From: Macrostomum lignano
Taxonomy: Eukaryota
DNA: 64,000 nt
Direction of reading: 5' to 3'
Assembly: GCA_002269645.1 (NCBI GenBank)
Contig: NIVC01000822.1
Span: forward strand, 124,001 to 188,000
The notes beneath the pieces were generated by a model. The model ran no database searches. It was not told the origin of the DNA and was given only the letters and a program-made list of their open reading frames with translations. A program made the translations under genes and the position numbers. Positions 3,001-63,980 of this stretch are shown one piece after another. Positions within the stretch are counted from its first letter, which is position 1. Each line of letters opens with the position of its first letter.

Positions 3001-3222
3001 TGTAAGGATATATGTGTAAAGATATATGTGTAAAGATACATGTGTAAAGATACATGTGTAAAGATACATGTGTAAAGATACTTATGTGTAAAGATGTATG
3101 TGTAAAGATACATGTAGAAAGATTACATGTGTAAAGATACTTATGTGTAAAGATATATGTGTAAAGATACATGTGTAAAGATACATGTGTAAAGAAACAT
3201 GTGTAAAGAAACATGTGCAAAG
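1..3222. repeat. Satellite array of interspersed 14-bp (AAAGATACATGTGT) and 16-bp (AAAGATACTTATGTGT) monomers; continues beyond window start
   Basis: Monomers read directly. A rarer AGAAAGATTACATGT variant recurs. Identical spurious ORFs at 126-419 and 2156-2449 show a 2030-bp higher-order duplication. Confidence 0.97.
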
Positions 3223-3700: not shown

Positions 3701-4630
3701 TTCTGAAAATAATCTACATATACATGTAGAATTCTTTGCTTTGTCCCCCCACAATAAAATCCATTGCGACCCTGTCGGCTTGCCCATATGATAGTGCGCT
3801 CTTCAAAAGGCGTCCCATAAAAGGATAAGCAGGTGATAACTAATAGACGAAAAATTCCCACTGCCTAAAATCCTCGCCCTTAATAGGTTTCGCTTATGCT
3901 AATTCCGAAAGGGGTACTTTACATGTAGATTTAACCCGTGGCTTGTGCTTGAACGGATTGGAGAAATCCAAAAACATTTTTTTCAGTCAAGCATAGATAA
4001 TCTGAGCGCCTAGAAATGTACGCCAGGACGCGTAAAAAATATGAGGCTGCGAGGCAGCGACCTTGGACGAAGAAATGACTAGACTGGGCAAACTATGTTT
4101 ACAGGAACGCGTTGCTAAAAGTACAAATCCTAGTATTGGCTGCCTATTTATTATTCTATTTTTAGACAAGAAATAGACAAGTTCTACGACCACAGAAAAT
4201 TAATTGACTTTGAAGCAAACCGTAGCATCAACAAATACTGTTTCCTTGGAACTTTCTTGATGTGCTTTTACTGAAAGAAAACTATGCGAGTTTTCTAGGC
4301 AATGGCCAAGGTCAATGGCCAATGGCCAATGGCGTTGGAAATGGAAATTTGGCCATTAGCTTAAATTACCGCTTCATATTAGCTGCATTGATTGAATTGT
4401 CTATGGTCGAAACAGGACTTTCAGTTAATGACCAGCCATTAAGCATTAAGTTACGTTAAGTGCATTTCGATCAATGCAAAATTTGATTTCATAGACAGTT
4501 GTCTATGAATTTAGACCTTATGAATTTCAACAACTGCATCTAAAATTTGCAAGTTGCAAGTATCGTAAAAATAATTTTGTACAGCAAGAGTGCAGCTGAC
4601 CCGTAAAACAATGCCTATTCACCCACTCAC

Positions 4631-5370
4631 CTAGGAGGGCCGGGTGTTGCTGCTTTCTGGCAGCACTCAATCTTCACTGCCGAGCAGCACAAAAGCGGCG
4701 GAGGAGGCAGCGGCGCTTGAGCAGAGGACGCGGCAACCTGTGTCTGCTGCGGCGTCTGTGGCGTCTGCGGTTGCCCTGATGGCGAATCTCTGGTAGACGA
4801 GGCAGGTGCGCTGGCGCTGGCGGTTGCCGGGCTGGCGTCTCCGTCGCCGACACCAGTGCTAGAGCCGGCACCACTTGTATCACCGTTGTCGCACGGACGA
4901 AGCGCCAACAGGCGGCGCTTTTTCGGGACTGCCAGACAGCACTGCGGTGTTTGGAGAGGCTTGCCAGCTGGGCAGCCTTCGACTGGGCAACAACCACCGC
5001 CTGTGTCAACCAGGCAGCAGTCAACTGTCAGCCGCTCATCAATGTCATCGCACGGGCAGACCTGTCGCTTCAAACTGGAGCCGCTAGTCTGCGTGCTGGC
5101 CTCTGAATGAGCGCTGGAGGCACCAGCCTGAGATGCTGGAAGCATCAAAGTGCGCACCAGCGACATGCAATGATCAAACTGCAGGTGCTGGAGCAGAGAC
5201 CAGGGTGTGCGGCAGCGCCTGTTGCATTTGGAGCATTCGAGCATCGACTCTGATGGGCCCGAGCCATCGTACCGAATGTGGCAGCTAGAGATCTTATGGT
5301 CCAGGAAGCGGTGGAAGTCCATCACTTCGAATTCGGCGTGGCAGGCCCCGCAGGACAGATAGTCGGGCAT
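4631..5370 (-). CDS. BCL11-like: 5' coding exon of a BCL11/Ctip-like zinc-finger transcription factor
   Basis: DYLSCGACHAEFEVMDFHRFLDHKISSC fits the BCL11 N-terminal CCHC finger. CSKCNRRCRTPWSLLQHLQFDH fits the first C2H2 finger (W-x-LLQH-x-Q-xx-H). The ORF stop falls inside a consensus donor AG|GTGAGT (intron starts at 4630), so the gene continues toward or past position 1. Confidence 0.85.
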
Positions 5371-33800: not shown

Positions 33801-35055
33801 GACGCTTCTATGATTTTTACATGACGCTTCTATGATTTTTTACATGACGCTTCTATGATTTTTACATGACGCTTCTATGATTGTTTACATGACGCTTCTA
33901 TGATTGTTTACATGACGCTTCTATGATTTTTACATGACGCTTCTATGATTGTTTACATGACGCTTCTATGATTGTTTACATGACGCTTCTATGATTGTTT
34001 CATGACGCTTCTATGATTTTTACATGACGCTTCTATGATTGTTTCATGACGCTTCTATGATTGTTTACATGACGCTTCTATGATTGTTTCATGACGCTTC
34101 TATGATTTTTACATGACGCTTCTATGATTGTTTACATGACGCTTCTATGATTTTTACATGACGCTTCTATGATTTTTACATGACGCTTCTATGATTGTTT
34201 ACATGACGCTTCTATGATTGTTTACATGACGCTTCTATGATTGTTTCATGACGCTTCTATGATTGTTTACATGACGCTTCTATGATTGTTTACATGACGC
34301 TTCTATGATTGTTTACATGACGCTTCTATGATTTTTACATGACGCTTCTATGATTGTTTCATGACGCTTCTATGATTGTTTACATGACGCTTCTATGATT
34401 TTTATGATGACGCTTCTATGATTGTTTACATGACGCTTCTATGATTTTTCATGACGCTTCTATGATTTTTACATGACGCTTCTATGATTTTTACATGACG
34501 CTTCTATGATTTTTACATGACGCTTCTATGATTTTTTACTTGATTTTTACGACGCTTCTATGATTGTTTACATGACGCTTCTATGATTGTTTACATGACG
34601 CTTCTATGATTTTTACATGACGCTTCTATGATTTTTCATGACGCTTCTATGACGCTTCTATGATTTTTACATGACGACGCTTCTATGATTGTTTATGACG
34701 CTTCTATGACATGACGCTTCTATGATTGTTTACATGACGCTTCTATGATTGTTTACATGACGCTTCTATGATTGTTTACATGACGCTTCTATGATTTTTT
34801 CTTGACGCTTCTATGATTTTTACATGACGCTTCTATGATTTTTACATGACGCTTCTATGATTTTTACATGACGCTTCTATGATTGACGCTTCTATGATTG
34901 TTTACATGACGCTTCTATGATTTTTACATGACGCTTCTATGATTTTTACATGACGCTTCTATGATTGTTTACAAATGACATGACGCTTCTATGATTTTTA
35001 CATGACGCTTCTATGATTGTTTACGCTTCTATGATTTTTACAGACGCTTCTATGA
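30831..35055 (-). repeat. Same 23-bp satellite in opposite orientation, right array
   Basis: TTTTTACATGACGCTTCTATGA units; private variant TTTTGGCAGGACGATT at about 31529, 31889 and 32182. Confidence 0.97.
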
Positions 35056-37865: not shown

Positions 37866-39062
37866 CACTGTTTTGCACAATCAGTGAGCAGATGGCCACT
37901 AATCTTTGCTTATTGCCATATTGCTTCTGGATAATCGAAACCATATGAAATGTTTTGTCAACTTGCAGGTTAAAGTTGATATGTAATCCCCTTACATATT
38001 TATTATTTTATTTTATATATCAGATTAGCACTGCTCTCCCCGATTAGCGCTGCTCGTAAAGCTTAGCGTAGCCCCAGCAAAAGTATCTACAAAATGAAAA
38101 TGCTAAAAATTTGCATGAATCCTCATAGGAAACAATGATTATTGTCACAAAGATAAATTCGCTGCTTCATTACAGACTCGAGCTGCCGACCTTCTGCTAA
38201 AAGCCTTATACTATTCAAGAAGTTTAGTAACTTCGGCAGTTACTAAAACTTCTAATTCAAGATTCAAGATTCAAACTAAATTCAAGAAGTTTAGTAACTT
38301 CGGCAGTTTAAAGTTAACCCCCCCCCAGAAATCGGCAGTTATCTCTACAACATCCTGAAATTAGCTATCACTTCTAATCCCACATACAGACTGCAGTCAT
38401 ACTCTTAGCAGCCTGCAGATATCCACTGTGCCGTCTACAACTTTCATTAACATCAGCAAACTACAATACTTCACTCAGCAGTCCGCAGTTATCCACTCAA
38501 CAACTTGCACTTAATTCTTCACAGCTATTATCCACTTTAAACTCTGTAGATAGTTATCCCCTCAACAGTTTGCTGCTATGCACTCATAAGTGTGGAGGAA
38601 CTACCTCAGCAGTTTGTTCCATTTTCCCTTTGCAGTCTGCATGAATGATCCCTTTGACAATCTGCAGTTCCCCTCAGCATCTTCTGTTTTCCTTTCCAAT
38701 AATCTTCCACTCTTCCAATAATCTAAAAATGTGCTCAGCATTTTACGGCTCACTAAACAATTTTCAGTACATATCGGCATTCTTAAAAAGCTCAAAATTT
38801 AGCAATACCTTTAAGCAATTTTAACAGCATGGTCTGCAGTTTAATAGCAATTTCATACTTTCATGGTGCGAGGCAGTACTCGTTGATGGGATCAGTAATA
38901 CACGAAGCAGTTTTTTAAAATCAAATTTGATAAGTGGCTTGTGCCAAGTAGCAAAAATTATTTGCTAATTAATAAAAATGGTGCAATTAAAATTAATAAA
39001 AAATATGTTATATTTAATCGAGTCACAAGCCACAAATGAATGAATTTACTTATTTTAATTAT

Positions 39063-39143
39063 CCACCGGGGAGGCGGACTCGAACCTTGGACCTTACGCC
39101 TAGCCTAAACCTAGTCCTAGTGCCTACACTGCGGCTATTCCGC
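39063..39143 (-). ncRNA. tRNA-derived SINE-like head (Pol III A and B boxes)
   Basis: Minus strand reads GCGGAATAGCCGCAGTGT...GGTTCGAGTCC; second copy at about 47609-47689. Confidence 0.6.
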
Positions 39144-40840: not shown

Positions 40841-41292
40841 CAGGGCGTCGCCAACAGAGGGTACATCTTTCCCTTGTAAAAGCTATACGGCCTCACCACC
40901 CAACCGTGTGACCCAATATTGAAATCAATAATATTCCTTCGGCGAAAAATATAGTGCCTGGAATTCTGCTGCATTAATAATAAAACTAAGTACGTGTAAG
41001 ACCAAAATGTGTTTCTGTGGCGCTACAAGTAGTGCCTGCGCCTAAATGAGTGCCTGTAGCGCTAATTAAAATGAGTGCCTGTGGCGCTAAAATGAGTGAC
41101 TGCGGCGCTAGAAAGAATTTCTGCCTGCGGCGCCAAAATGAGTGCCTGCGGTGCCAAAATGAGTGTGCCAAAGTTTGCGGTGCCAAAATGCGATACAAAA
41201 TGAGTGTCTGAGGCGCCAAAATGAGTGTCTGCGGTGCCAAAATGAGTGCCTGCGGCGCCAAAATGAGTGTCTGCCTGCGGTGCCATAATGAG
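40841..41292 (+). repeat. CAGGGCGTCGCC-type element with 21-bp minisatellite AAAATGAGTGCCTGCGGCGCC
   Basis: About 12 degenerate units at 41030-41292, abutting the Gypsy integrase fragment. Confidence 0.7.
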
Positions 41293-43180
41293 TGTCAGTT
41301 CGCCACTGTGTGGACACCTTGGCCAGACGAAGACATTGAAGCGGCTACGTGAACGATTCTGGAGGCTCGGATTAGCCCGTGTCACCGAGAACTTTATCAG
41401 TAAGTGCCGCGCCTGTCTTGAAAGTAAATCCCGAAGACGAGACCGAGTACCTGTACAGAGCTTCCCTGTGTGCGAAGTCCTGGGAAGAGTACATTGCGAC
41501 GTAGTAGGCCCAATTGCCCAGAAGAGCAAGAGCGGGAACCGCTACATCTTGACGCTATGCGACGCGACGTCGAAGTACCCGTTCGCCTATCCGATGAGGA
41601 ACCAGAAAGCCAAGACGGTCATCAAGATCCTGCAGGAGCGCTTGATCCCTGACTTTGGTGTACCATGCTGGATACACACTGATCAAGGAACCAATTTCAC
41701 TGGCTCAGCTTTCAAGAAGTTCTGCGACCTGTTTGGCATCCGGCATACGACGACAACACCGTACAATCCAGCTTCAAATGGGCAAGTCGAGAACCTCAAC
41801 AAGCAGCTGAAGAGTGTCCTCACCTGCCTCCTCGAGCGCAACCATAACGACTGGGACACCTTCCTCCCAGCCTGCTTGATGGCGCTCCGCTCTAGCGTAC
41901 ACCCGGTGACAGGTTTCACGCCTCACTACCTGGTGTTTGGTCGAGACTTTGGACTACCAATCGACAACGCGATCAAGAAGCTGCCGGAGTATGCCGATCT
42001 GCCTGACTATGTCAAGGACTTCCAGCGCCGCTTAGACGAAGCAACCGAACTGGCCAAAGACCGCCTGCATCTGCACCAGCAGCTGCGTGACGAGCACTAC
42101 TCAAACCTGCCCGCCGCCAAGAAGCTCCAACCTGGTGACCTGGTTTTCCTCAACAACCCGGTGCTCGAACCGGATGAAGCGGCGAAGTTCCATCGACCTC
42201 GCAAAGCGCTGTACGAGGTAGTCGAACCCAAGGGCGAGGTCGTCTACAAGATTCGCCGTAGAGTGCCAAACCCGCGAGCCAGGCTACTCTTCCCTGATGC
42301 CGACTACCAGCTGACTTCGGATCCAGAAGTCGACCAGGCCAAGAAGCGCCGCAGGTCGACTGATGCCCCGGATGGTGCAGGACCCGCGACCCTGACACCG
42401 ATCCCGGAGGACGATCCCGATGATGATGACGATGACGATGACGCATGGCCGGCCTTCCGGTGGCGCTTCCGGCCGTTGGCGATCCCGGATGTGCAGCCAG
42501 GAGGTGGACCGGTCACGACACTAGCGAACCAGGCAAGTGCATTTCGGCGTGAGCCACTGCCGTATGGTGATCGCCATGATGGTGTGCCTGGTTTGAATGC
42601 GTCTGCACATGTTGCTTCTTTTTCACCTGTCCATGCGTCCCCTTCTCCAGAACCTTTTTCTGCGGCGCAGTCTCCTGCGCCACCTTCTTGCACCACTCAG
42701 GTGGAAGCGTCTCCCGTACCAGTAGTGGTAGGTAGGCCAGTTAGGGATCGGAGGCCGCCGGAGAGGCTTCTGATTAGCGATCCTAGGGCCAAAACGTACG
42801 TCAGTCGCACCGCCCGCATGCGTGTGCACAAATTAAAACATTTCAGCGCAGCAATGCACAAGCGCCCTTATCAGGCGAACTCAAGCGCGTCCTCTGAGGA
42901 TGAGCAGGGTCGGCCTAGCCGGAGCCGCCACAGGCAGGGAACCCCGTCCTCCCCGGAGGTCATGGGTGTCCCGCGCCGACCTTTAGGGAGCGAGAGAGAC
43001 GCAACGACTCCCCATCACCCGAGATGCGACGGAGCCGACCTAGCCACCGAGCCCGAAAAACGGTCCGCGTGGAACTCCCCGAGGTCATTGACCTCACGGG
43101 TGACTCGCCGCCGGGCGATGCCCCGGTTCGCCGGCTCACGGCTCAGCGGCTGGCAGCTGCCCTTGCCTATGCTCAACTAG
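41293..43180 (+). CDS. Ty3/Gypsy integrase (5'-truncated pol) with long C-terminal extension
   Basis: GHLG..KTL..L..RFW..C..C zinc-binding region; rve motifs VHCDVVGP, IHTDQGTNF, NGQVENLN; RRPPERL tail. The annotated ATG at 41267 lies in the minisatellite and is not the true start. Confidence 0.92.
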
Positions 43181-45261: not shown

Positions 45262-47689
45262 AAAACTTTCACCAGCAAAAAAGTTTCCTTCATCAGCCCA
45301 AAACCCTTTTTTCAATCAGCAAATAGTGCTTATCCTTTCAAGCACAAACTCTTAGAGAGCATATCGTCATTGGCCTGGGCGTATTCTGGTCCGCAGCAGA
45401 ATCTCAATATGCCAACCCTGACGGCCTTTGACACCCCTCTTTATTAGCCTAACTCAAAGAATCAAACCTTAAATAAATACGCTGTTATTTCCTATCAGCA
45501 GAATTCAGCATCACTTGTGTGTACTATTTCATTATCTGAATTAAATGAGCTACTTGAGCTGTACTACTTGACGATCTGACAATCGCTCAAAAACCTAACA
45601 CCCTCCCCCCAAAAATTCAGCCATCCCCCATGAGCCTTGACATCTCAGCAATTCCCCCAGTAGGCCTTGACATCTCCGAAATTCCCTCAGTAAGCATCGA
45701 CATCGCAGCAATTAAACTCGAGCCTTGACATCTACGCAATTCTCCCAGGCCAGTAAGCCTCGACATCTCAGCAATTCCCCAAGTAAGCCTTGAAATGTCA
45801 GTAATTCCCACAGTAAGCCTTGAAATCTCAGCAATTCCCCCAGTAAGCCTTGACATCTCAAAATTAACCCCAGTAAGCCTCGTCATCTCAGCAATTACCC
45901 CAGTAAGCCTTGACATCTCAGCAATCCCCCAGTAAGCCTTGACATCTCAGCAATTCCTCTAAGAAGCCTTGACATCTCAAGAATTTTCCCAGTAAGCCTT
46001 GACATCTGAGCAATTCCCATGAGCCTTGAAATCTCAGAAATTACCCCAAAAAGGCCATGACATCTCAGCAATTCAACCAATAAGCCTTGAAATCTCAGCA
46101 ATTTCTGAGATGTCTCCACAAAAACCTGAAATTATCCCTTCCAATCCCAAAAACAGACTGCAGTCATACTCTAGCGGCCTAGAATTGTCCCCACAGCAAA
46201 CAAAAATTTACTCAACAGTCCACAGTAATCCACAGTTACCACCTCAGCAGTTTGCAGCTATACGCTCATAAGTCTGGAGCAAAGATAAAAAGAGCAAAGA
46301 ATATGGTCTGGAGGAGCTCCGTCTGCACATCTCACATCTTTAAATCTATGAAATGATCCTCCAGACCAGACAATATGATCTATTTGTCTGGAGAAACTAC
46401 CTTAGCAGTTTGCAGTTTGTCCCCTTTGCAGTCTGCAATGATCCTTTTGACAATCTGCAGTTCTTCTGTCGGCCGGCTCCTCAGTCTCCTGCTTAGCAAA
46501 CTGCAATGATATTTTCAACAATAAAAACTTGCTAACAGTTTAGTACGACTCATTAATCAATTTTCGATACATATCGGCAGCTTTTTGCACAAATCAGCAT
46601 TAAGCAATACCTTCATTCCTAAATAGCAAGCATCCCCCAAAAGAAAGCAATCGCAGCATCTCCCCCCGTCAACCTGGTAATCTCAGCACTTCCCCCCATA
46701 AGCCTTTGAAACCTCAATTCAAGCGATTCTTCCAGTAAGCCATGGCATATCGGCAATTCCCCATGGGCTTTTAAATTTCAGAAATGCCCCAAAAAGCCAT
46801 GAAATCTCAGCAATTCCTGAGATATCCCCACAAAAACCTGAAATTATCCCTTCTAATCCCACAAAACAGACTGCAGTCATTATCTTAGCAGCCTGGAGTT
46901 ATCCCCTTGCAGTCTATACACTTTCATTAACACTAAGCATTTATCCCCCTCAGCAGCCTAGAACTGTCCCGTCAGCAAACCACAATAATCCACTCAGCAG
47001 TCCACAGTAATCCCCTAAACAACCTGCACTTAATCACTTAAAAAGTACAGTTTTGAAACTGATGTCTTGCTATCCTATCTTCTCTGAGAGTTGTCTTGCT
47101 CAGAAGTCTACCAATCCTCCAAGCAGCCCCCTCAGCAGTTTTCAGCTATAGGCTTATAAGTCTGGAGGAACTACCTCAGCAGTTTTCAGTTTGTCCCCTT
47201 TCAGCAGTTTTCAGTTTGTCCCCTTTGCAGTCTGCAGTTCTCCTCTCGGCCGGCTCCTCAGTATCCTCAGCAAACTGAAATAAAGGATCCTTTTAAGAAT
47301 CTGATTTTTTTTCAGCATTTATTACGGTTCACTAATCAATTTTCGATACATATCGGCAGTTTTTTTCACAATTCAGCCTTTATTTTAACAATAAATTTAG
47401 CAGCTTAGCAATTTTATACTTTCATGGAGCTAGGCAATACCCATTGATGCGATGAGTAATACGCGAAGCAGTTTTTTACAAATCAAATTTGCTTAGTAAA
47501 TTAGCAAAAAAATTCCATTGAGTGTGCCTTGAAAATTCAACAAAAATATTCCTATTAGTTGAGCCCGAAGCTATATATAAATGAATAAATAAATTTAATT
47601 TTAATCATCCGCCGAGGAAGCAGGCTCGAACCTTGGACCTTACGCCTAGCCTAAACCTAGTCCTAGTGCCTACACTGCGGCTATTCCGC
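45262..47689 (-). repeat. Second copy of the family-C internal block (30-bp minisatellite, CAGACTGCAGTCAT module, tRNA-like head)
   Basis: About 45280-46090 resembles 35790-36500, and 46830-47689 resembles 38330-39143; 46140-46610 is a further copy of the same module. Confidence 0.75.
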
Positions 47690-47899
47690 AGTGTTCCGCA
47701 GTGAAACTTTTCTCAGTTGTGCCTCACGCTGCAAGTTTATAACTTTCTAATTTTTACATTTTTCAAAAGAAGTTTTTGCTCTCGTCTCATCTCATTTCTT
47801 TTCATTTCATTTTCATTTCTTTTCATTTCATTTTCATTTCTTTTCATTTCATTTTCATTTCTTTTCTTTCAATATCTCGTTTCCTTTCATCTTCCTCCA

Positions 47900-48871
47900 A
47901 TGAACTATTTCTTCCCTGGCTTCTCTCCATACCCATCGATGTTTTTTTTCACACCCCTACCCAATTTGGCCGTATCCATACAACTGTCAACTGCAACTGC
48001 AACAGAGCCAACAGCAACGGCACGATGGGCAGCAGCCCCAAGAGCAGGCGCAGCCTGCGTTGTCACCAAAGGCGACCCGACCGCTCCCGAGATCCTGGAC
48101 GTCGTGGCGGTACGTGGAGCCTCGCCCAACTGCAGCTTTGACGAGGAAAGACGCGCGCTCGGTCTAGCTATTAACTGGCTCAATGCCCACCGTGCACCCG
48201 GCAGCGTGCTCATCTGTTCTGACAGCAGGGCACTCCTAGACGCTCTTCTTAGCTCCCGCCCAAATTGCCTGCTCCCGGACCTCTCTTGCGCTACTGCATC
48301 CATCACGCTTCAATGGGTCCCGGCACACTGCGGAATCATCAGCAACGAGGCAGCGGACGCAGCTGCCAAGGCCGCTGCTGCTGATGTCACTGCCGACACC
48401 GCTGTGGCCGCCACCTCTTTCCGCAGTGCAGCGGCAGCGATTCGTCGGGTGATCAGCGACCCTCCGCTGTCCCATGCCCGCACCGCCGCTGTCTACTGCG
48501 CGCTTAACCGCCAACGGGATCGGCAGGAGTTGCTGAATCGGCAGGACGCAGTGCTCCTGGCTAGACTCCGTGCTGGACATTGCAGTCTTCTTCGGGCCTA
48601 TAGCAGCATTGTCAACCCGACTGCCGACCCCGTTTGCCACCGCTGCAGGGAAGGCCCGGAAGACCTCGAGCACTAGCTCGGTTGCCAGGCCCTCCGGCAT
48701 CTGAGGCTCTCGATTTTCGACACGGACAGACTGGACCTCGGGGTCCTGACCGCCGCCCCAGCGAGGTCGGTGGCGCTAGCGAGACGCAGTCTCTGACTGT
48801 CCTCGGCGCCTATGCCCCAACAACAACAACAACAACAGCAGCAGCAGCATCAGCAGCAGCATCAGCAGCAT

Positions 48872-48904
<33 letters not shown>

Positions 48905-49392
48905 CAGCAGCAGAAGCAGCAACGCGGTCGCTACGATTTACGAAGAAAGATCGAAATTAGGAAAAAACGTCGTCTCAAGAGACAAGCGATGTTAAAATTT
49001 ATGAAGAAGCGTAAGTTAACTTTTTAATCTCTCATGCCTAATTTGGGCTCTATAAAAACTTGTAGAACTTTGTAATCTACTTTATAATACGCGAGTCTAT
49101 TAAGAAAGTAAGGACTTTGAATTTCTTCACTCACTGCAGTCGCTGAAAAAGTATTTTGTATCAGCAGAAGTGAAAGAATTACTCTTATATAAAATTTACA
49201 GGTACTATGTGCTTCTACTGCCTGGAAGTAGGGCATAAGGTAGCGGACTGCCGGCACACTGCTAACGCAGCCACTGCCGCTTCAAGGGCTACGACGGCCA
49301 CTGCTGCTAACCCAGCCACTAAGCCCGCTGGGGTCGCTGCTGACGACGTACATTTAGCTACTGACGACAGCGGCGTCGCTGCTGTTGAATAG
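47900..49392 (+). pseudogene. Two-exon gene for a ~131-aa basic CCHC zinc-knuckle protein, disrupted by a LINE insertion
   Basis: Removing 48020-48924 rejoins an open frame. Intron 49011-49201 (GTAAGT...TTTACAG) splices in frame to CFYCLEVGHKVADC. One extra T in the T8 run at 47942-47949 must be removed. Confidence 0.7.
48020..48916 (+). mobile_element. 5'-truncated RNase H-containing non-LTR retrotransposon (I-superfamily-like)
   Basis: E..ALGLA, ICSDSRALLDAL, LQWVPAHCGIISNEAADAAAK, LARLRAGH and CHRC...EH*LGC. TAG at 48674 interrupts the frame, which ends at 48796. (CAA)n/(CAG)n tail; candidate TSD CAGCAACG at 48012-48019 and 48917-48924. Confidence 0.88.
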
Positions 49393-50290
49393 CTTGAATA
49401 GCTTGTACTGGTTAATTGTTTTCCAACTTCTTTCTATTTCAATTAATTTAATTTATTACTAAATAACTCATTCTATAACTAACAAACTATATGCATATAA
49501 CTAATATTAAATGAAAGAATGATGACATGGCAACCTTTAAATTGTGTTCTAAACTGGTCATCTGAAAGTTTTTAGACAGGAGTTTTCAATTGTCTTGAGT
49601 TTTTCTTTTTCTCTTTTATCGTAATTACGACATCCTACAATTGAAGCCAGAATGTACAATTGTTCAATCCTTTGTCGAATCAAATGGGATTTTATTAGGC
49701 AGTATAATTCAATCAATATACCCAGTTGGGTATATATGGCCCAGCTGTCATTTATTGTCCGTAGGTTAGCCAATTTGCGCCCGCTATTCTCTTGCGAACT
49801 TTGGGTGAGGCTTATCGGGAGGGCTGAATAAGCGCGCGTGACATAAGCGCGGATGTGCATTTTTGGCAAGTGTGGAAATAAGCGCGCACGGGTACAAGCG
49901 CGCAAAAACCACAGTGACTTTACCGCGCAGGCCATTTTTACGGCTGAGACATAAGCGCGCAGGCAATTTTTATGACCATCCAGCACAAAGTCAGGAAGCT
50001 TTATCCATATACTAAAAATGGTCTGTCGTTTTCTCTACATTTATTTTTCACAAAGTTAAAATGCTTAGTCTTAAAATTTTACAATGCTGCGACTAAAATG
50101 GTAAAATGTTCAGTAGCTAAGAATAGAACCACAAGTTATGCAAGTCTGAGGCCGGGTTTTGAAGGTCTGTCGCTGGCTGCAGCTGATGGTCCGACACTGG
50201 CTGCTGGAAGAGCTGGGATACGGGAGGGCTGAATACGCCGGTCTTATTATTCTAACTTCAAGCTGCAGCATTCAGATTGATGCGTCTAGA

Positions 50291-50430
50291 ATGTGCGCTT
50301 GTGCCAGACTCATGCATTTTAAATTTGCTTGTGCCAGACTCGTGCATTTTAAATGTGCTTGTGCCAGACTCATGCATTTTAAATGTACTTGTGCCAGACT
50401 CATGCATTTTAAATGTGCTTGTGCCACTAA
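50291..50430. repeat. 30-bp tandem repeat (GTGCTTGTGCCAGACTCATGCATTTTAAAT), about 4.5 units
   Basis: Read directly. Confidence 0.92.
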
Positions 50431-52770
50431 GAGCAGTTACTAAATGCGCGCTTATGTCATGCGTCATGTATCTATTATTTCGGGGAACGGGGGGGGGGGC
50501 GGCAGCCCCCTCGAGACTACGACAATGCCCTTTAGACACTGGCGCTCCTTGACGGTTGCATTTTAGCGTTTGTTCTAACGGTTTTTGCGCCCTTTTGGCA
50601 GTTTTGGCACCCCGGATTGACCCTGATTGGCATCCCTATAACATGGCACCCCTCGTGCTAACTGGCGCCCCTTGGCCTCCGAAAAGAAATTATATAACTG
50701 CTCCTGGCTAAAAGTATAAATTTGTCGATGCAAAATTTCTACATTCTACATTCAATAAATTATAAGTATTCATCCTTCCAAATTCTTCATTCCATTCCCA
50801 CTTAGTCTAAGCCCACTTAACTCCGAAATAATGTTGAGAAATAACTCAGTTCTTCAATCCTAATTCTGCTTCTCAGTCTCCTACTGTCCAACATTGTTTA
50901 ATCATACCCTCAGTTTCTTCGCCCTCAATCTCAGGCGCATAGTTTTTTGTCTCTTCGATAGATATTAGAGGCCGAATGTGCAATGCTAAGAGAATGATGT
51001 ATGAAAGGAATTATTAGACTTGATTTTATAATTAAAAGCAGAGCCTGTCCAGATACTCGTGTATTTGTGTACTTGCTCCGTTGCATTATTTTGTCGCAAA
51101 AAAAACATTTCTTAATCGGTCCCAATTGGTCTCAATTGTAAAGATATATTAGAAGCATCCACAAAGTCATTGAGTAGTCAATGAATTTCATCTAGTCGAA
51201 AAAGCTGCTAATCAAAGAACCTACCTACTAAAATTATCATGCTTGCTTGTCAGCCCATTTTTAATTAGTATGTACATGTATCAAACGTAGGATTCTGCCA
51301 AAAACGTCAAATAGAGCGCTCAGACTAACTCGAAATGCTTTTAACTTCGTTTTTTCTTACTACTTGAAGCAGCTCTGAAGCTTTTTACTTCATCTATTCG
51401 CTTATGGCTGATTCATACCGCCATCAACCCCATCAAACAGTCGACTCACACTACTTAAGTACAAAAGGATGGAAAAGAATGTACAAATCTCGTGTTCATT
51501 CTAGCCGTAGAATGGCAGCCGTAAGTTGTTCCAAATAAAAAATACCAAAGACATTATTCAGGACTTTCCACTTCTTAATATACGGTAAGTAGCCTACTTA
51601 CTAATAGTATCGTAGAAGTCATAGTGAAATGAAAAGCATTATCTTTATATTGACGCCTCCATCTAGATGGCTTTAAATACTCGTATACTCAAAATTTTCC
51701 TTGAAAAAACGAAATCTAACTAAAAAAAGCCGTGAAAGGAGTTTTTAAAAGTTTTCGAGGGGTATTAAATAAGAGCTTTTCATTCCACATCAAGACTTGG
51801 TCAAAATTAGCACATATTTAAGTATACTTACTGTAACATACATGTAAAAAACATACAGTAAACTAAGCTGATATAATATTTGATGAAATGAATACTTTGT
51901 ATTATAAGTCCGTACTCATATATAAGAGTGCAGTAACCGTCGGGTCTTAGCTGTTGTCACGTTATTTGCGTAGCAGTGGCTATGGCCCTCAAAAGGGCCG
52001 TTTGACGAGAGTACTGACGTTATTAGTCCCAAAAGGATGGTGAACTCAACAATGGCAGAGTAGAGTTTGTAGCGGTAGCACTTGGCAATGGCGGTAGGTA
52101 ACAAAAGACGCCAACTGGTTTATAATTATCAATGTTAATATGAATACAGAAGCTTATGACGTTATGGGGCACTGGCGGCTGCAACAATGGGTTGATGTGA
52201 TCTAGTCGTATAGATGAAAGTTGAGTAGATGATGATATTGGAATGAAGCCGAGTAGCAAGTGATGGCTGTGAGCACAGTGATGGCAGTGAGCAGCAAGTA
52301 GGCAAAAAGACAAAGTGGCGAGATTGGGCGTCGGCCCGTAGCAGTACACAGTGGAGCAAGAGTGCGTAGACAGTCTGGCCCAGACAGAGTGGAGCCGTGG
52401 CGAGAGATCAGGAAAGGAAGGCACGCCAGAACAGAAGCGAAGAAAAGGAAAGGAAAGGAAAGGAAAGAAAGGAAAGTGAAAAAAACCCCCAGCCCGCCGC
52501 CAGGCGGGGTTAATAAAGGAGCGCAGGAGGGTTAACATAATATATGCGGAGAGTTATCATTGGCTGGCGAGGGAAAAACAAGAAACAGAAATTATCGATT
52601 GCGCGAGACCCTACAGGCGTACGCAAAGCTTACAAAGTACGCAGTGATTTAGCAATTGATACAGATTAGTTGCGCGCTACTACAAGTAAACGTAAGAATA
52701 CACAATTGGAAATTTTAAATGAGAAATTGTAAGGAAAATTGCAGTCCAACGGCCCTTTTGCGGGACCACT

Positions 52771-54880: not shown

Positions 54881-57205
54881 ATGTCTTCTGGACTCGACTT
54901 CCGACTGGGGGAGATGCCGCTGTGCTACCCCGATGTCGAACAGTATTTCAATCGCCTCGGTTTCTACATTAGCGCAACGGAAAAGAATGACCAGAGCAAA
55001 GCCGTTCTACTTGCTACTTGTGGAGATGCCGCATTTTCACTGATTGAGACACTTGTGCAGCCAGAAGACGTTTTAAACGATACAAAGTGTACGTTCGATT
55101 TCATCAAAGAAGCGGTACTGAGCCACTTGAAACCCAAGCGCCTTCTTCACTACGACAGACATCTGCTACATACCATGGTCCAAATACAGGGTGAGTCGGT
55201 GACAAAGTTTTTGGAGAGACTGAAGACACAGGCCAACAAATGCGAATTCGGCAAACTGCGAGAAGAGTTAATTCTTTCTCAGTATATTTTCGGACTGGCT
55301 GATAATTCTCTGAAGCAAAAATTACTAGTGAAGGAAAAGCTGGATCTAGAGACTGCGGTTAAGGATAGTCTCTTATCGGAGTCCGTATCTCAAGCTACTG
55401 ATTCGAGCAAAACCGTCGCAGCAGTGCAGAAAACCACTCACAAGAAGACCGGCAGCAACCAAAAGTATCCAACGGTATCCAGGCCAATGCCAACAACGCC
55501 GAATCATTCTAAGTCTAGCTGCCATTCCTGTGGTAACCCGGGTCATCTTAAAAATACCTGCAAGTTCCGTAATGCGACATGTCACAAGTGCGGAAAAACC
55601 GGGCACATTGCCAGAGCATGCAGGTCCAACATCGGTGGCAGCAAGAAAGTCACGTACGCGGAAGTTGAAGCAACCGACGCTGATCCACCTGATTCAGCTG
55701 TGTACTCGGTGATCAAGGCTACTCCATGCGACGAACTCTGGAAAATAGTCTGCACAATCGGTGATTCCACAGTCCATATGTGCGTCGACTCTGGTAGTCA
55801 GGTAACAATTCTGCCAGTAACCATCGTAGAGCAAGCCGGATTGCACATGGTTGACGCGGACATTCGATCACTCAAAGTTTTCAGGGGAGCTTCAGTTTCC
55901 GTACGAGGCATGGCTAAGGACGTCACGATTGAGCTGAGAAACGGCAAAACGGCATGCGGAGACATATATGTCGGGGACCCATCTAGTCAAGCCATTTTGG
56001 GAATAAATTTTATTCGTGCCTTCAACATATTGACGGTAGACGAATTTCTGTGCCATCCAGTGCAGTGTGATGAAAATTCAAGATTCCAGGCCAGCTTTCG
56101 CCTGAAGGACGGGGCCTCTACCGATGGAATGTGCTTTCCTGCCAGATCCCTTCCGTTCTAAATTAAAACTTTGGTTGAACTGGAGCTGAAAAGACTGGAA
56201 AGTGCAGGCATCATCTACCCAGTTCACTCGCCTAAGGTATCGTGCCCTATTGTTCCTGTGTTGAAACCAGAAGGATCAAAGAGACCCATTAGACTGTGTG
56301 GAGACTATTCAGTCACTCTCAACAGACTGATAGACCGAGATCGATATCGACTGCCAACTTTGAAAGAAATCCTTCAAAAGATCCCAAATTCGAAAGTGTA
56401 TTCAGTGCTCGACCTCGAAGACGCATTCTTGCAGATTCCCCTAACGCCAGAAAGTCAGGATCTTACGTGTATTTCCACCCATGTAGGACATTTTGCCTTC
56501 CGCAAGTTACAATTTGGGGTATCGGCAGCACCACTGATATTTCAGGAAGTTATGGATATCTTGCTCAAAGGAATACCAGGCACTGCTTCTTATCAGGACG
56601 ACATCATTCTAGGCACTGAAACAATGGAGCAGCATCGACGATCCTGGTGCAAGTCAAGGAAAAACTGAAAAAGCATGGATTCAAGATCAATGAGAGTAAG
56701 ACTCAGGAGTGCAAGAAAGAAGTCACATTTCTGGGATTTCTCCTCCGAGATGGGAAACTTTTGCCTGATCCTGCAAGAGTGGAAGCTCTATCCAACTTGT
56801 CAGAGCCAAAAGACCGGGATCAATTGAGAAGTGCTATATGCACCTTAAGACACTACGGGATTTTTTGTCGGAACTTCTCTATGATCGCCAAGCCGCTCTA
56901 TTACCTCCTAAAGAAAGGGGTTCAGTGGAAATGGACTGTCGTTCACTCAAGTGCGTTCTCTCAACTGAAAGCTGCTGTAACGGAAGGTCGAATCGTTTCT
57001 TATGATATAAAAAGGCCGTTATTTCTAACCTGCGACGCTTCTCAGAGTGGAGTCGGATTTGTGCTGTCCCACGACACGAACCAAAAAGAAGTTGTATGGC
57101 TGGGAAGCAGAGTTTTGACCAAGGCTGAGGCCAACTACGCCAACATTGAGCGGGAGGCTCTTGCAATTATCGAGGGTGTAAAATATTTTCATCAATTTCT
57201 GGCCA
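54881..57205 (+). pseudogene. Decayed Ty3/Gypsy gag-pol (Gag, two CCHC knuckles, protease, RT, partial RNase H)
   Basis: CHSCGNPGHLKNTC, CHKCGKTGHIARAC, VDSGSQVT, RLCGDY, LQFGVSAAP, YQDDI, CDASQSGVG, EREALAII. In-frame TAA at 56159, frameshift near 56645, truncated near 57205. Confidence 0.93.
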
Positions 57206-57404
57206 GAGCGACCAGAGCGTGGTTACATCAAGACAGTGAAATTAATCGTATTAAAATGAAATTTACAGGTTCAGTGATCTTCTTATGCCTAAAAGTCATC
57301 CTCTTGCTCAGCTTTTTAGTGCTTATAAATGAAATTCCCATCTGTTTTGCGAATTCCCTACCATCTGCTAACTCGATTAGCAACATTCCTCCATTAGAGG
57401 ATTT

Positions 57405-57665
57405 CACCATCAACAGCATTCTCCCATCAGCAGAATTCCCCCATCAACAGCATTCCCCCATCAACAGAATTCCCCTATCAACAGCATTCCCCCATCAGCA
57501 GAATTCCCCCATCAGCAGCATTCCCCCATCAACAGCATTTCCCCATCAGCAGCATTCCCGCATCAGCAGAATCCCCCCATCAGCAGCATTCCCCCATAAA
57601 CAGAATTCCCCCATCAACAGCATTCCCCCATCAGCAGCATTCCTCCATCAGCAGCATTCCCCCAT
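57405..57665. repeat. 17-bp minisatellite (CCCCCATCAGCAGCATT)
   Basis: Period 17 read directly; follows the Gypsy truncation. Confidence 0.9.
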
Positions 57666-58434
57666 TAACGCAGCTCAGTCTGTTAAGCAACGTAGTTAAG
57701 CAATAGATCAGTCACTATATTAGTTCAGAAACTCAGTGAGTCAATAATTTCCTACTTATTTAAAGACTCTCCTACTCAGCCCAAAGGCTTTCTACTTTGT
57801 CATGATAATTAAGACAGTTAAATTGAATCGATAATGTACGCGTTTAATAAGTGGTGCTATTAAAATTGAAAAGACGGAAGACATCATTCAGGACTTTCAA
57901 CTTCAGTTTAACTCTTTTTATGGCTTCAGTGCGAATGTAACGTGCACTTTACTATATTATAAATTTAGCCATAGTGGAAAGTCCCGCCAGGAGCTGGAGT
58001 CTCGTAGAATACTTGTACATCAATACATCAACTAAATGCGTATAAATTACTCATAGTAGCAGGTAAAATACAGTCTCCAGAGTAAAAATAAGTATGAATA
58101 AGCTAGTTAGTATTCTACAGAATCAGATATTGAACAGAGAATTTCCTGATTTTTTTCGCGGAATATAGCATTATAGTAGAATTTTTCTTCATATATAGCT
58201 GGCGCACATTTACTGTGATGCTGGGTGAAAAGCTGTGATGGTGGGCACCAGCATTATTGAAACTAATTGAAATTAATAACTGCTCAATAACTGCGGCTGT
58301 ACTGGTATTAAGCATCTTGGGGGGTTTGATAAAGGTATTGCCTTAAATATAAGCTATTTAAAAATATTAAAAATAAAAATAAAATAGGATGCATATAATG
58401 AGACTAAGGGCTTATATGCATATAAATCTGTTGA

Positions 58435-60289: not shown

Positions 60290-61674
60290 AAATGCCAGAT
60301 AAAGAATCAAGCTCATTGCTAATGAGATGAGAGTGAAAAGGAGAAGGAATAGACTATAAGAAGAGAGGAGAAGCGAGAGGAGGATAAGAGAAAAGATAGA
60401 AGACAAGAAGAGAGACGATGGGGTAAGGATAAGGAGTGAGCAGATAATATTGGAGTAAGAAGCGAGAGGAGGGGAGAGAGAAGGGAGAGGAAAGAGTAGA
60501 AGTGAGAAGAGGGAGAGAGAAGATGGGAGAGATGAGACAGGATCGATGACAGAGGAGAGTAGAAAAGAGTGAGAAGAGAGTAGAGATGAGAGATGAAGGA
60601 GGAGAGAGCAGAGTGCAGAAAGGCGAGAGAAGAGAATAGAGGGGAGGGAGTATAAAAGAGAGAAGAGAAGAGGAGTAACGAAAGAGAGGAATCAGAAGAG
60701 GGTAAAGAGAAGAGTACACTGAAGATTGGAGAGTACAGATGACAGAAAAGAGAGGGGAGTAGAGTGAACACGATATCTGAGAGGAGAGAGGAGAGCGGAG
60801 AGAGGAGTCAGATGAGGGGAAAGAGAAGAGTACAGAGGAGAGGGGTGAGAACATACGAGTATACGAGAGTAAAGATGACAGATGAGAGAGGGAAGATGAG
60901 ACTGAGAGAGCAAAGACGAGAGTGAACACACGAGAGATGAAAGAGTAGAGAGAAAAGAGGATAAATAAGAAATAAGAGATGAAAGGTGAGACAAAGGGGA
61001 AGAGAGAAGTGAGTGAGGAGAGAGGAGGGGAGGGGAGAGAATCGAGAGGACAGGGGAAAGAGGGGAAAGGATGAGAGAGATGAGAGAGGGGAGAGGAGAG
61101 AGAGGGAGGGATAGAGGTAGAGAGCATGCAGAGAGAAATGAGAAGAGATAAGAGAGAAAAGATAAAAGAAGAGAAAGGAGAGATAGATAAGAGAGCAAAG
61201 ACGAGAGAGGAGAGGTGAGGGAAGAGACGATAGAAGAGAGGAGAAAGAAGAGAGGAGAGGAGAAAGACGAGAGAGTACAGAGTACAGAGGAGGGAGGAGA
61301 GGAGAAAGGAGAGAGGAGAAGTGTTCGGAGAGGGTAGAGTAAGGAGTGAGAAGAGGGGAGAGGGAAGAGAGAGTAGAGAGCAGAGAGAAGATAGAGTAGA
61401 GAGCAGAGAGAAGAGAGAGTAGAGAGCAGAGAGAAGATAGAGTAGAGAGCAGAGAGAAGAGAGAGTAGAGAGCAGAGAGAATATAGAATAGAGAGCAGAA
61501 AGAAATGGGAAGAGATAAAAAAGGAGAAAGGGAGAGATAAGAGAGCAGAGACAAGAGAGGAGAGGAGAGGAGAGAAAAGAATAAGAGGGAATAGACGAGA
61601 GAAGAGGGGATAGAGGAGAAAGAGAAGAGACCACAGACCAGTGAGAAGAGAGAAAACAGAAGAGAAGGTAGAGA
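60290..61674 (+). repeat. Purine-rich (GA) low-complexity tract
   Basis: Nearly all A/G; short 21-bp tandem at about 61370-61490. Confidence 0.95.
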
Positions 61675-61976: not shown

Positions 61977-63980
61977 ATGGCATCTGGAGTGCATCTCAAG
62001 GAGACCACAAAGCAAGATATACTGCGCATGTTTTTTAGTGAAAAAAACTCATGCAAATCAATAGCAGAAAAATTAGGTGTATCAATAATTGCTGTGCGCA
62101 GAACACTTCTGGCCTCAAAGGCTTCGAAGAAACGTGGGAAAAATCGTAATTTTGTAAATATTGAAGCCTGTCATTTGGCTTTCATCGATAGAAAAATCGA
62201 AGAATCCACAGGCTTTATTTCAGCTGCCTGTCTCTGTGCTGCATTAGAGAAGCAGTTTGAAATGCGCATTTCTAGGCGAACGATGAACAGAGTTCGAAAT
62301 CGATTGAATTGGCTGCGAACAAGCACTGAGTACTGTCAGATAGTGAAACTAAAAAACAGGCCTGTGCGTTGCCTTTGGAGTCTTAATGCCATTCTCAGCG
62401 GTGATACATTCGACAATGTAATATTTACTGACGAGTGTTCTGTTTTCTTGAATAGAAAGACTAAAAGAATTGTGTTTCGAAGAGGGTATGAGAAACGTCC
62501 GCATATTCAAGTTCCGAAGCATCCTCTGAAGGTAAGAATTTAACCATCAATTTATTTTGAATATAAAAATCTTGCAAATAATCAAACCTCATGTTATTAA
62601 AACTCAAACACCGTAGGTGCACGTCTGGGGAGGAGTCAGCAGACGAGGGCCGACAAACGTGGTCATCTTCCAAGGTTGCATGGATGCAGAGTTTTATGTT
62701 CAGGAGATTCTGCAAAATACTCTTCTGCCTACAATCAAAGCAAAATTTCCGGATGGGCACCGACTATTTGCGGTACGGATTTTTAAGTTCACTCCCAATT
62801 CACTCTCCCTTCTCCCTTTATTCTCTCCTCTCCTTTACCTCCCTTCTCCCTCTATTCTCTCCTCTCCTTCACCTCCCTTCTCCCTCTATTCTCTCCTCTC
62901 CTTCACCTCCCTTCTCCCTATATTCTCTTCTCTCCTTCACCTCCCTTCTCCCTCTATTCTCTTCTCTCCTTCATCTCCCTTCTCCCTTTATTCTCTCCTC
63001 TCCTTCACTTCCCTTCTCCCTCTATTCTCTCCTCTCCTTCACCTCCCTTCTCCCTCTATTATCTCCTCTCCTCCACCTCCCTTCTCCCTTCTCCCTCTAT
63101 TCTCTCCTCTCCTTCACCTCCCTTCTTCCTCTATTCTCTCCTCTCCTTCACCTCCCTTCTCCCTCTATTCTCTCCTCTCCTCCACCTCCCTTCTCCCTTC
63201 TCCCTCTATTCTCTCCTCTCCTTCACCTCCCTTCTTCCTCTATTCTCTCCTCTCCTTCACCTCCCTTCTCCCTCTATTCTCTCCTCTCCTTCACCTCCCT
63301 TCTCCCTCTATTCTCTCCTCTCCTTCATCTCCCTTCTTCCTCTATTCTCTCCTCTCCTTCATCTCCCTTCTCCCTCTATTCTCTCCTCTCCTTTATCTCC
63401 CTTCTCCCTCTATTCTCTCCTCTCCTCCATCTCCCTTCTCCATTTATTCTCTCCTCTCCTCCGTCTCTCCGCCTCCATTCTCTACCTCTTTCCTTCTACT
63501 CCCCCTCTCTCCCTTCACAGTCTGCTTGTTTTTGAAAATGTATTGAATACTTAAGCATATGTCCTATATTTTCGCTATTATGTAAATTCTAGGACAATGA
63601 CCCAAAGCACTGCAGCCGCAGAGCAGCTGAGTTCATGTCTACTCATTCAATTACGTGGTGTCGAACCCCATCCGAGTCTCCTGACATCATGTCGCCTATA
63701 GAGGTAAGTGTCACACACTTTTTTAAAGATCGCACTTGTATAGAATATTTTGCTATTTCTCATTTTCTCTACAATTTGAATCCATCAGAATACCTGGAGC
63801 TTCATGAAGGAATTCCTAGACAAGGATGTAAAACCTAAGACCCAGGCCGAGCTAATACAAGGCATCGAGGATTTCTGGTCCAAGAAGATGACAGTTAAAG
63901 TGTGCAACAAATTTATTGACCACATTTTTACTGTTTTACCTACCGTGGCCGTCAACATTGGAAACCCATCAGGGTTCTAA
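61977..63980 (+). CDS. Four-exon Tc1-family transposase, ~337 aa (61977-62531, 62617-62772, 63593-63703, 63789-63980)
   Basis: HTH-like N-terminus, NVIFTDE, VHVWGG, DNDPKH, SPDIMSPIE, NTWSFMK. Three GT-AG phase-0 introns give an uninterrupted frame. Confidence 0.9.
62795..63515 (+). repeat. Pyrimidine-rich ~34-bp minisatellite (CTCCCTTCTCCCTCTATTCTCTCCTCTCCTTCAC) inside transposase intron 2
   Basis: Read directly. Confidence 0.93.

What the first reader, a model, noticed from the sequence alone, without database searches (positions are those of the whole stretch)
47900..49392. Hidden two-exon zinc-knuckle gene knocked out by a LINE
Excising the LINE and one TSD copy, dropping one T from the T8 run and splicing 49011-49201 gives MNYFFPGFSPYPSMFFSHPYPIWPYPYNCQLQLQQSQQQRGRYDLRRKIEIRKKRRLKRQAMLKFMKKRTMCFYCLEVGHKVADCRHTANAATAAS...VE (~131 aa). 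It has an aromatic/Pro-rich low-complexity N-terminus, a Gln tract, a very basic helix, one CCHC knuckle and an Ala/Thr tail. Both the TSD join and the intron phase keep the frame, which is unlikely by chance. I do not recognise the family; it resembles a small RNA-binding or condensate-forming protein.
Basis: partly seen in the sequence, partly recalled or inferred. Interest (0 to 1): 0.7.

Follow-up and report, generated by a model that had tools for sequence, protein, structure and literature searches.

The report
LINE-interrupted small zinc-knuckle gene relic
A short two-exon reading frame for a basic protein with one zinc knuckle really is there, split by a truncated LINE and a one-base frameshift, but no relative of it was found, so it is best read as a dead or unannotated lineage-specific gene, not a striking discovery.

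Summary
These are the ATG at 47900, a T8 run, a 5'-truncated LINE in sense orientation flanked by an 8-bp duplication, a GTAAGT...CAG intron (49011-49201), and a GC-rich second exon with a canonical CCHC knuckle.

The knuckle is not chance: shuffles give 0.085 loose matches per window and none of the strict form. Exon 2 is a sharp 63-65% GC island, bounded by the splice acceptor and the stop codon inside 18-33% GC DNA. Some real coding sequence, living or dead, therefore lies here.

The case is weaker than claimed in three ways:
- No homologue beyond the knuckle was found in 5.8 billion clustered proteins, 1.84 billion representatives, the JGI metagenomes or the window itself.
- The locus carries at least two lesions and sits among satellites and transposons.
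- The LINE boundary is ambiguous. A second equally good 8-bp duplication would make the CAG/CAT tract a host poly-Gln/His tract containing an in-frame TAG.

The closest resemblance is to the Ty3/gypsy Gag nucleocapsid (basic stretch plus a single knuckle), and it is marginal. My verdict is a probable pseudogene or unannotated orphan gene of modest interest.

The parts
47900..47949 (+). Putative start codon and first 16 codons (MNYFFPGFSPYPSMFF), ending in the T8 homopolymer at 47942-47949. One T must be dropped to stay in frame.
   Evidence: Frame 2 has no ATG and no AG acceptor upstream of the run, so a frameshift or a homopolymer sequencing error is required.
47950..48019 (+). Rest of exon 1 left of the insert (SHPYPIWPYPYNCQLQLQQSQQQR, frame 2). 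The last 8 nt (48012-48019, CAGCAACG) are the left target-site duplication copy in model A.
48020..48916 (+). 5'-truncated LINE fragment in sense orientation. It holds the C-terminal part of the ORF2 RNase H domain and the ORF2 Cys/His motif. There is a nonsense TAG at 48674-48676 where a related element has Trp. The ORF2 stop is TGA at 48794-48796, followed by a 21-nt 3'UTR, (CAA)6 at 48818-48835 and a CAG/CAT tract at 48836-48916.
   Evidence: Pfam RNase_H E=1.8e-5. 41% identity to two metagenomic ORF2 C-terminal proteins, one of them downstream of RVT_1 ORFs. The related element L001 has the same short UTR followed by a (CAA)n tail. The YTDGS start of RNase H is missing.
48917..48924 (+). 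Right target-site duplication copy, CAGCAACG (model A). The alternative pair is CAACAGCA at 48009-48016 and 48833-48840 (model C).
48925..49010 (+). Exon 1 right of the insert: the basic segment GRYDLRRKIEIRKKRRLKRQAMLKFMKK, with 16 Arg/Lys among the 31 residues 40-70.
   Evidence: AF2 predicts a helix with pLDDT 89-93 here.
49011..49201 (+). Putative phase-1 intron of 191 nt, 30% GC, from GTAAGT to TTTACAG.
   Evidence: Read-through stops at a TAA 18 nt after the donor. The exon-2 frame is closed upstream by a TGA at 49171-49173.
49202..49392 (+). Exon 2: the knuckle CFYCLEVGHKVADC (49210-49251), an Ala/Thr-rich tail and a TAG stop at 49390-49392. It is a 59% GC island.
49506..49511 (+). ATTAAA, the only polyadenylation-signal-like hexamer in the 600 nt after the stop.
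   Evidence: pattern match only
46820..47689 (-). Neighbouring repeat with a tRNA-like (A box and B box) head at 47600-47689. It ends 210 nt upstream of the ATG and has a second copy at 38337-39143. It is not part of the gene but bounds its upstream region.
   Evidence: ARAGORN calls no tRNA.

Best explanation
The locus is the relic, or possibly a mis-assembled but LINE-disrupted allele, of a small lineage-restricted gene. The gene has two exons and encodes a protein of about 130-160 aa.

The protein has four parts: an aromatic/Pro-rich low-complexity N-terminus, a Gln tract, a strongly basic helix, and one retroelement-type CCHC zinc knuckle followed by an Ala/Thr tail. Its predicted pI is 9.8.

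By analogy with nucleocapsid-like modules, the intact protein would bind single-stranded nucleic acid through the basic helix and the knuckle. This function is inferred, not shown.

A non-LTR retrotransposon that carries RNase H and ends in CAA repeats inserted in sense orientation into the CAA/CAG (Gln) codons of exon 1. It was 5'-truncated in the process. Its triplet tail probably paired with the similar target during target-primed reverse transcription; this step is inferred.

The copy also carries a 1-nt length change in a T8 run. Together these make the copy non-coding as it stands.

Shown here: the sequence features, the LINE identity, the duplication, the non-random knuckle and the exon-like GC island. 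Inferred: transcription, splicing, the protein's function, and that the T8 run is a real mutation and not an assembly error.
For: - The reconstruction reproduces the 131-aa ORF.
- The CCHC pattern is expected 0.085 times per window by chance, and the strict form appeared in 0 of 200 shuffles. Pfam zf-CCHC is the top family hit.
- GC is 30% in the intron, 63-65% in exon 2 and 18-23% after the stop, with the steps at the acceptor and the stop codon.
- The donor is an exact GTAAGT, and the only phase-compatible AG lies in the open stretch before the knuckle.
- Pro/Tyr/Phe-rich composition continues across the T8 frameshift.
- The insert is a LINE ORF2 3' part. A relative has the same short UTR followed by a CAA tail.
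- An 8-bp duplication flanks the insert.
- The basic segment is predicted as a confident helix.
- The best solved-structure match is the Ty3 Gag nucleocapsid, a basic stretch plus a single knuckle.
Against: - No homologue of anything but the knuckle was found in 5.8 billion clusters, 1.84 billion representatives or the JGI metagenomes. There is no second copy in the window.
- Three edits are needed to obtain the ORF. Much of exon 1 is low-complexity or microsatellite-like ((CAACTG)n, CAR repeats), where open frames come cheaply.
- Pfam zf-CCHC scores 14.2 bits, below the 20.8-bit cut-off.
- No branch-point consensus lies near the acceptor.
- The surroundings are satellite arrays and transposon fragments, a setting where dead fragments are common.
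- There is no transcript evidence.
Confidence: 0.55

Rival explanations
1. The gene is the same but the insert boundary differs (model C). The LINE ends with its (CAA)n tail, and the CAG/CAT tract at 48836-48916 is the host gene's own poly-Gln/His repeat. The duplication is then CAACAGCA (48009-48016 and 48833-48840). The ancestral protein would be about 158 aa, and the copy carries a third lesion, an in-frame TAG at 48902-48904.
For: The alternative duplication is also 8 bp and also keeps the frame. The tract reads as Gln/His in the same frame as the downstream RGRYD. The only related LINE I could inspect has a pure CAA tail with no CAG/CAT part. Mixed CAA/CAG/CAT is typical of coding Gln/His repeats (general knowledge).
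Against: Only one related element was available, and it is only 41% identical. The in-frame TAG and an AAG fit a non-coding tail equally well. No empty site was available to decide.
Confidence: 0.2
2. The basic stretch and knuckle are a decayed fragment of a retroelement Gag nucleocapsid (Ty3/gypsy-like or LINE ORF1). The N-terminal ORF and the 'intron' are coincidental, and there was never a host gene.
For: The best database matches are retroelement knuckles. These are Ty3 Gag nucleocapsid at E=0.03, aligned over the basic stretch and knuckle, and a fish-type repeated gag knuckle protein and similar hits. The window is full of retroelement fragments, including a gypsy gag with two knuckles. 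Exon 2 is GC-rich and Ala-rich, like the nearby LINE.
Against: Similarity does not extend beyond about 20-45 residues. No capsid domain lies upstream and no protease or pol downstream. The GC-rich island ends exactly at a splice acceptor and at a stop codon. A consensus donor sits in a compatible phase. There is no detectable relation to the gag in the window (E=0.65).
Confidence: 0.15
3. The ORF is a chance patchwork. Open frames in low-complexity DNA were stitched together by three permitted edits, and nothing here was ever coding.
For: Three edits were needed. Exon 1 is largely simple sequence. No homologues were found. Each frame-keeping event has a probability of only about 1 in 3.
Against: The strict knuckle pattern appeared in 0 of 200 shuffles. 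The GC island has sharp edges at functional signals. There is an exact GTAAGT donor. A basic segment lies immediately upstream of the knuckle, as in real nucleic-acid-binding knuckle proteins.
Confidence: 0.08

Closest known systems
Ty3/gypsy Gag nucleocapsid (for example yeast Ty3 NC, PDB 6r22)
   Same: An Arg/Lys-rich stretch is followed directly by a single C-x2-C-x4-H-x4-C knuckle. The core CFYC...GH....CR aligns with Ty3's LCFYCKKEGHRLNECR.
   Different: The match is marginal (E=0.03). There is no capsid domain, protease or pol, and the candidate has an intron between the basic stretch and the knuckle. The Pro/Tyr-rich and Gln-rich N-terminus and the Ala/Thr tail have no counterpart.
Cellular CCHC zinc-knuckle proteins (CNBP/ZCCHC type; Pfam PF00098)
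   Same: The knuckle has the same spacing, an aromatic residue after the first Cys and Gly-His. Such proteins are among the weak hits (P0005, P0006).
   Different: Those proteins carry several knuckles and share nothing else with this one. The Pfam score is below the gathering threshold.
RNase H-bearing non-LTR retrotransposons with simple-repeat 3' tails (from memory, not tested: I, LOA, R1 and Tad-type clades, for example the I factor with its (TAA)n tail)
   Same: The insert has an ORF2 RNase H domain, a C-terminal Cys/His motif, a short 3'UTR, a triplet-repeat tail, 5' truncation and a short target-site duplication.
   Different: The tail is CAA (and possibly CAG), not TAA or poly(A). The clade was not assigned because the reverse transcriptase is missing from this copy. 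The closest relatives are anonymous metagenome contigs at 41% identity.
Transposon-disrupted pseudogenes in heterochromatin
   Same: A small gene copy with several lesions lies among satellite arrays and nested transposons.
   Different: No functional parent copy could be identified, so the pseudogene status is inferred.

Membership tests
zf-CCHC zinc knuckle (PF00098) | C-x2-C-x4-H-x4-C spacing, with an aromatic residue after the first Cys and Gly before His | tested here: met
   CFYCLEVGHKVADC at 49210-49251. Chance expectation is 0.085 per window for the loose form; the strict form occurred in 0 of 200 shuffles.
zf-CCHC zinc knuckle (PF00098) | Profile score at or above Pfam's gathering threshold | tested here: not met
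   14.2 bits against a 20.8-bit cut-off, E=0.048
zf-CCHC zinc knuckle (PF00098) | Zinc binding and nucleic-acid binding | not testable with these tools
   Needs the purified protein. The single-sequence AF2 model drew the knuckle as a helix at low confidence.
Retroelement Gag (Ty3/gypsy) | Nucleocapsid module: a basic stretch followed by a knuckle | tested here: inconclusive
   The Ty3 Gag alignment covers residues 41-88 at E=0.03
Retroelement Gag (Ty3/gypsy) | Capsid (Retrotrans_gag) domain upstream and protease/pol downstream | tested here: not met
   No such Pfam hit in the reconstructed protein. The flanks are AT-rich with no long ORFs.
Non-LTR retrotransposon (the insert at 48020-48916) | ORF2-type RNase H domain and C-terminal Cys/His motif homologous to LINE ORF2 | tested here: met
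   Pfam RNase_H at 25.4 bits against a 25.8-bit cut-off, E=1.8e-5. 41% identity over 212 aa to P0007, E=8e-47. P0008 lies downstream of RVT_1 ORFs on its contig.
Non-LTR retrotransposon (the insert at 48020-48916) | Simple-repeat 3' tail and a flanking target-site duplication | tested here: met
   (CAA)6 follows a 21-nt UTR, as in the relative L001. An 8-bp duplication is present, but two alternative pairs exist.
Non-LTR retrotransposon (the insert at 48020-48916) | Reverse transcriptase and endonuclease domains | tested here: not met
   Absent from this copy. It starts inside RNase H and lacks the YTDGS motif, so it is 5'-truncated.
Expressed protein-coding gene | Uninterrupted ORF | tested here: not met
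   It needs removal of a 905-nt (or 824-nt) insert and a 1-nt correction
Expressed protein-coding gene | Homologues under constraint in other genomes, or paralogues | tested here: not met
   None found. The source organism's genome was not searchable, so the test is incomplete.
Expressed protein-coding gene | Spliced transcript | not testable with these tools
   No transcriptome of the source organism is available. The GT-AG sites, phase and GC contrast are consistent with splicing.

The most novel reading that the evidence does not exclude
The locus represents an unannotated, lineage-specific protein family. In it, a retroelement-derived nucleocapsid module (basic helix plus a single knuckle) was joined through an intron to an aromatic/Gln-rich prion-like domain. 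The interrupting element would then belong to a LINE lineage with CAA-repeat tails that homes preferentially into CAA/CAG (poly-Gln-coding) repeats.
Probability: 0.08. Interest if true: 0.5.

Novelty: new member of a known kind. Interest (0 to 1): 0.25.

Why it matters
If real, this would be one more small orphan zinc-knuckle gene, possibly nucleocapsid-derived, caught in the act of decay. It would also be an example of a triplet-tailed LINE landing in a Gln-codon repeat. That has some interest for annotating the source genome and for LINE target choice, but it changes no general view. For the scan, the practical lesson concerns the uncorrected sequence. It gives a spurious 319-aa ORF (47717-48676) that fuses the gene's start to LINE ORF2, and a gene finder could mis-call it.

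Tried and rejected
- Word-indexed search of the reconstructed protein against 5.8 billion clusters: nothing at E<=10.
- Full phmmer against 1.84 billion representatives: six hits, all generic or repeated knuckles.
- Back-translated scan of the JGI metagenome contigs: 600 pattern matches, none confirmed.
- tblastn against the window: no paralogue. The only other knuckles are in a gypsy gag.
- Exact-sequence look-ups of window ORFs (exon 2, the BCL11A-like ORF, gag-protease), meant to locate the source genome or other alleles: none on record.
- Identifying the organism:
  - The BCL11A-like exon gave no hit at E<=1e-10.
  - A literature search on the satellite units returned only one unrelated paper.
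  - Rfam found nothing at gathering thresholds, and only CTG-repeat artefacts at permissive thresholds.
  - The organism remains unknown; I take it to be an animal, perhaps an arthropod.
- Literature on LINE families with CAA tails: nothing useful.
- Terminal repeats that would make the whole unit a mobile element: none convincing.
- Fold search: not run, because the single-sequence model is confident only for the helix.
- A 21/28 match between 47926-47953 and the upstream repeat (family D6): judged chance, since it is seeded by the T run.

Full report
**Setting.** The window is eukaryotic, repeat-rich DNA.
- It holds long satellite arrays: a 14-bp unit at 1-3222, a 23-bp unit at 18059-29903, and the reverse complement of that unit at 30831-35055.
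- It holds Ty3/gypsy fragments: integrase at 41267-43180, and gag-protease-RT-RNase H at 54881-57699.
- One ORF has a BCL-11A-like CCHC finger, which I take (from memory) to be an animal domain.
- Rfam and ARAGORN find no RNA genes.
- I could not identify the organism.

**The observation.**
- Frame 1 from the ATG at 47900 reads MNYFFPGFSPYPSMFF up to the T8 run at 47942-47949.
- Frame 2 continues FFSHPYPIWPYPYNCQLQLQQSQQQR. It has a stop at 47901 and no ATG or AG acceptor before the run. Joining the two pieces therefore needs a 1-nt change in the homopolymer.
- The Pro/Tyr/Phe-rich composition continues across the run. This fits a single ORF broken by an indel, or by a homopolymer assembly error.
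- From 48020 the GC content jumps to 60-70%.

**The insert is a LINE.**
- Its translation has a Pfam RNase H match (E=1.8e-5, just below the cut-off).
- It is 41% identical over 212 residues to two metagenomic proteins. One of them lies downstream of reverse-transcriptase ORFs on its contig.
- The alignment starts after the YTDGS motif of RNase H, so the copy is 5'-truncated.
- ORF2 has one nonsense codon, TAG at 48674-48676, inside its C-terminal Cys/His motif. The related element L001 encodes Trp at that position.
- ORF2 ends at TGA 48794-48796. A 21-nt UTR follows, then (CAA)6 and a CAG/CAT tract.
- The related element on L001 has the same layout: stop, a UTR of about 30 nt, then a (CAA)n tail. 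The CAA tail therefore belongs to the element.

**Where the insert ends.**
Removing 48020-48924 restores ...QQSQQQRGRYD....
- A second pair is equally good: CAACAGCA at 48009-48016 and 48833-48840. Under that pair the 81-nt CAG/CAT tract is host sequence. It reads QQQQHQQQHQQHQQQQQQQQQQ*QQQK in the same frame as the downstream basic segment, with an in-frame TAG.
- The tail and the target are both CAR triplets in register. Every plausible boundary therefore keeps the frame, and frame-keeping at this join carries little evidential weight.
- I cannot decide between the two models without an empty site or other copies of the element.

**The intron and exon 2.**
- After the basic segment (48925-49010) comes an exact GTAAGT. 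Read-through would stop 18 nt later.
- The exon-2 frame is closed by a TGA at 49171-49173. Only two AG dinucleotides follow it before the knuckle. One of them, at 49200-49201 in TTTACAG|G, is compatible with the phase-1 donor.
- In 60-nt bins the GC content is 30-33% through the intron, 63-65% in exon 2, and 23% then 18% straight after the TAG stop. A GC island whose edges coincide with an acceptor and a stop codon looks like an exon, not like a random transposon fragment.
- No CTAAT-like branch site lies near the acceptor. ATTAAA at 49506 is the only poly(A)-signal-like hexamer downstream.

**Is the knuckle real?** CFYCLEVGHKVADC fits C-x2-C-x4-H-x4-C with the usual aromatic residue and Gly-His. 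The loose pattern occurs three times in all six frames of the window, and the other two are in the gypsy gag. Composition-preserving shuffles give 0.085 per window, and the strict pattern never appeared in 200 shuffles. Pfam ranks zf-CCHC first but below threshold (14.2 against 20.8 bits). I conclude that the knuckle derives from real coding sequence.

**Relatives.** None was found beyond the knuckle.
- The word-indexed search of 5.8 billion clusters gave nothing at E<=10.
- phmmer over 1.84 billion representatives gave six hits, all explained by knuckle repeats. They include a 1027-aa tandem repeat of a gag-type knuckle and CNBP/ZCCHC-like proteins.
- The metagenome scan and the window itself gave nothing.
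- In the PDB the best match is the Ty3 Gag nucleocapsid, aligned over the basic stretch and knuckle at E=0.03.
- These absences are weaker than they look. The BCL11A-like ORF of the same window also found nothing at E<=1e-10, and no window ORF is on record. The source lineage is therefore poorly covered by these collections.

**Structure.** A single-sequence AlphaFold model has mean pLDDT 62.5. It is confident only for a helix over the basic segment (pLDDT 89-93 for residues 41-60). The N-terminus and tail are low-confidence and the knuckle is mis-modelled. This supports 'a very basic helix' and nothing more.

**Interpretation.**
- The most likely reading (about 0.55) is a small two-exon gene for a basic, nucleocapsid-like single-knuckle protein, restricted to this lineage and seen here as a disabled copy. 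It has a LINE in the Gln codons, a homopolymer frameshift, and possibly a nonsense codon.
- The satellite and transposon setting, and the upstream repeat ending only 210 nt before the ATG, fit a decaying copy.
- The function, nucleic-acid binding or chaperoning through the basic helix and knuckle, is inferred by analogy only.
- The rivals are: the same gene with the other insert boundary (0.2), a decayed retroelement nucleocapsid fragment with a coincidental intron (0.15), and pure chance (0.08).

**Novelty and interest.** The components are all familiar: a CCHC knuckle protein, a 5'-truncated LINE insertion with a duplication, and a pseudogene in heterochromatin-like DNA. The protein has no detectable family, which is common for short low-complexity proteins. 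The CAA-tailed LINE sitting in CAR repeats is a neat detail but rests on two elements. I rate it a new member of a known kind, with interest 0.25.

Noticed in passing
window 47717-48676 (+): The uncorrected frame 1 from the candidate ATG at 47900 (and from an upstream TTG at 47717) runs without a stop into the LINE ORF2 frame. This gives a 319-aa chimeric ORF that an automatic gene finder could mis-call as an RNase H protein.
   Followed up: partly
window 4627-5370 (-): An intact 247-aa ATG-to-stop ORF has a BCL-11A-like CCHC finger (Pfam E=1.4e-11), a C2H2-like finger and a Cys-rich, low-complexity C-terminus. It found no protein at E<=1e-10 and is not on record in the contig collection.
   Followed up: partly
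window 18059-29903 and 30831-35055: Two large arrays of the same 22-23-bp satellite lie in opposite orientation (GCGTCATGTAAAAAATCATAGAA and its reverse complement). They are head-to-head across a gap of about 900 bp with 20% GC. AT skew flips from +0.37 to -0.34 at about 30 kb.
   Followed up: no
window 46820-47689 and 38337-39143 (- strand elements): Two copies (about 72-81% identical) of a repeat of about 870 bp both end sharply at GGCTATTCCGC. The last 90 nt, read on the minus strand, look like a tRNA head with A and B boxes (…GGTTCGAGCC…). This suggests a tRNA-derived SINE-like element with an internal repeat region. ARAGORN calls no tRNA.
   Followed up: partly
L001 1650-1740 (JGI metagenome contig): The related LINE ends in a (CAA)n tail, and the flank next to the tail is itself a CAA/TTG-rich hairpin (CAACTGTTGTTGTTGTGACAGCAACAACAGTTG). 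Together with the window's insertion into CAA/CAG codons, this hints at a preference of this LINE lineage for CAA-like repeats. The sample is only two elements.
   Followed up: partly
window 49800-50470: Several copies of an ATAAGCGCGC-containing motif lie in direct and inverted orientation (49835-49854 against 50444-50463, 90% complementary). They flank a 30-bp tandem repeat at 50297-50426. This may be a small foldback or MITE-like element just downstream of the candidate gene.
   Followed up: no
window 60464-61665 and 62799-63460: Long GA-rich low-complexity tracts and their CT-rich complement flank an ORF with weak helix-turn-helix (HTH) hits at 61977-62543. GC skew swings from +0.58 to -0.40.
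   Followed up: no
window 41267-43180 and 54881-57699: These are Ty3/gypsy-type retroelement fragments. The first has an integrase zinc-binding domain and core. The second has gag with two knuckles, aspartic protease, RT and RNase H, split into three ORFs by frame breaks near 56165 and 56650.
   Followed up: partly
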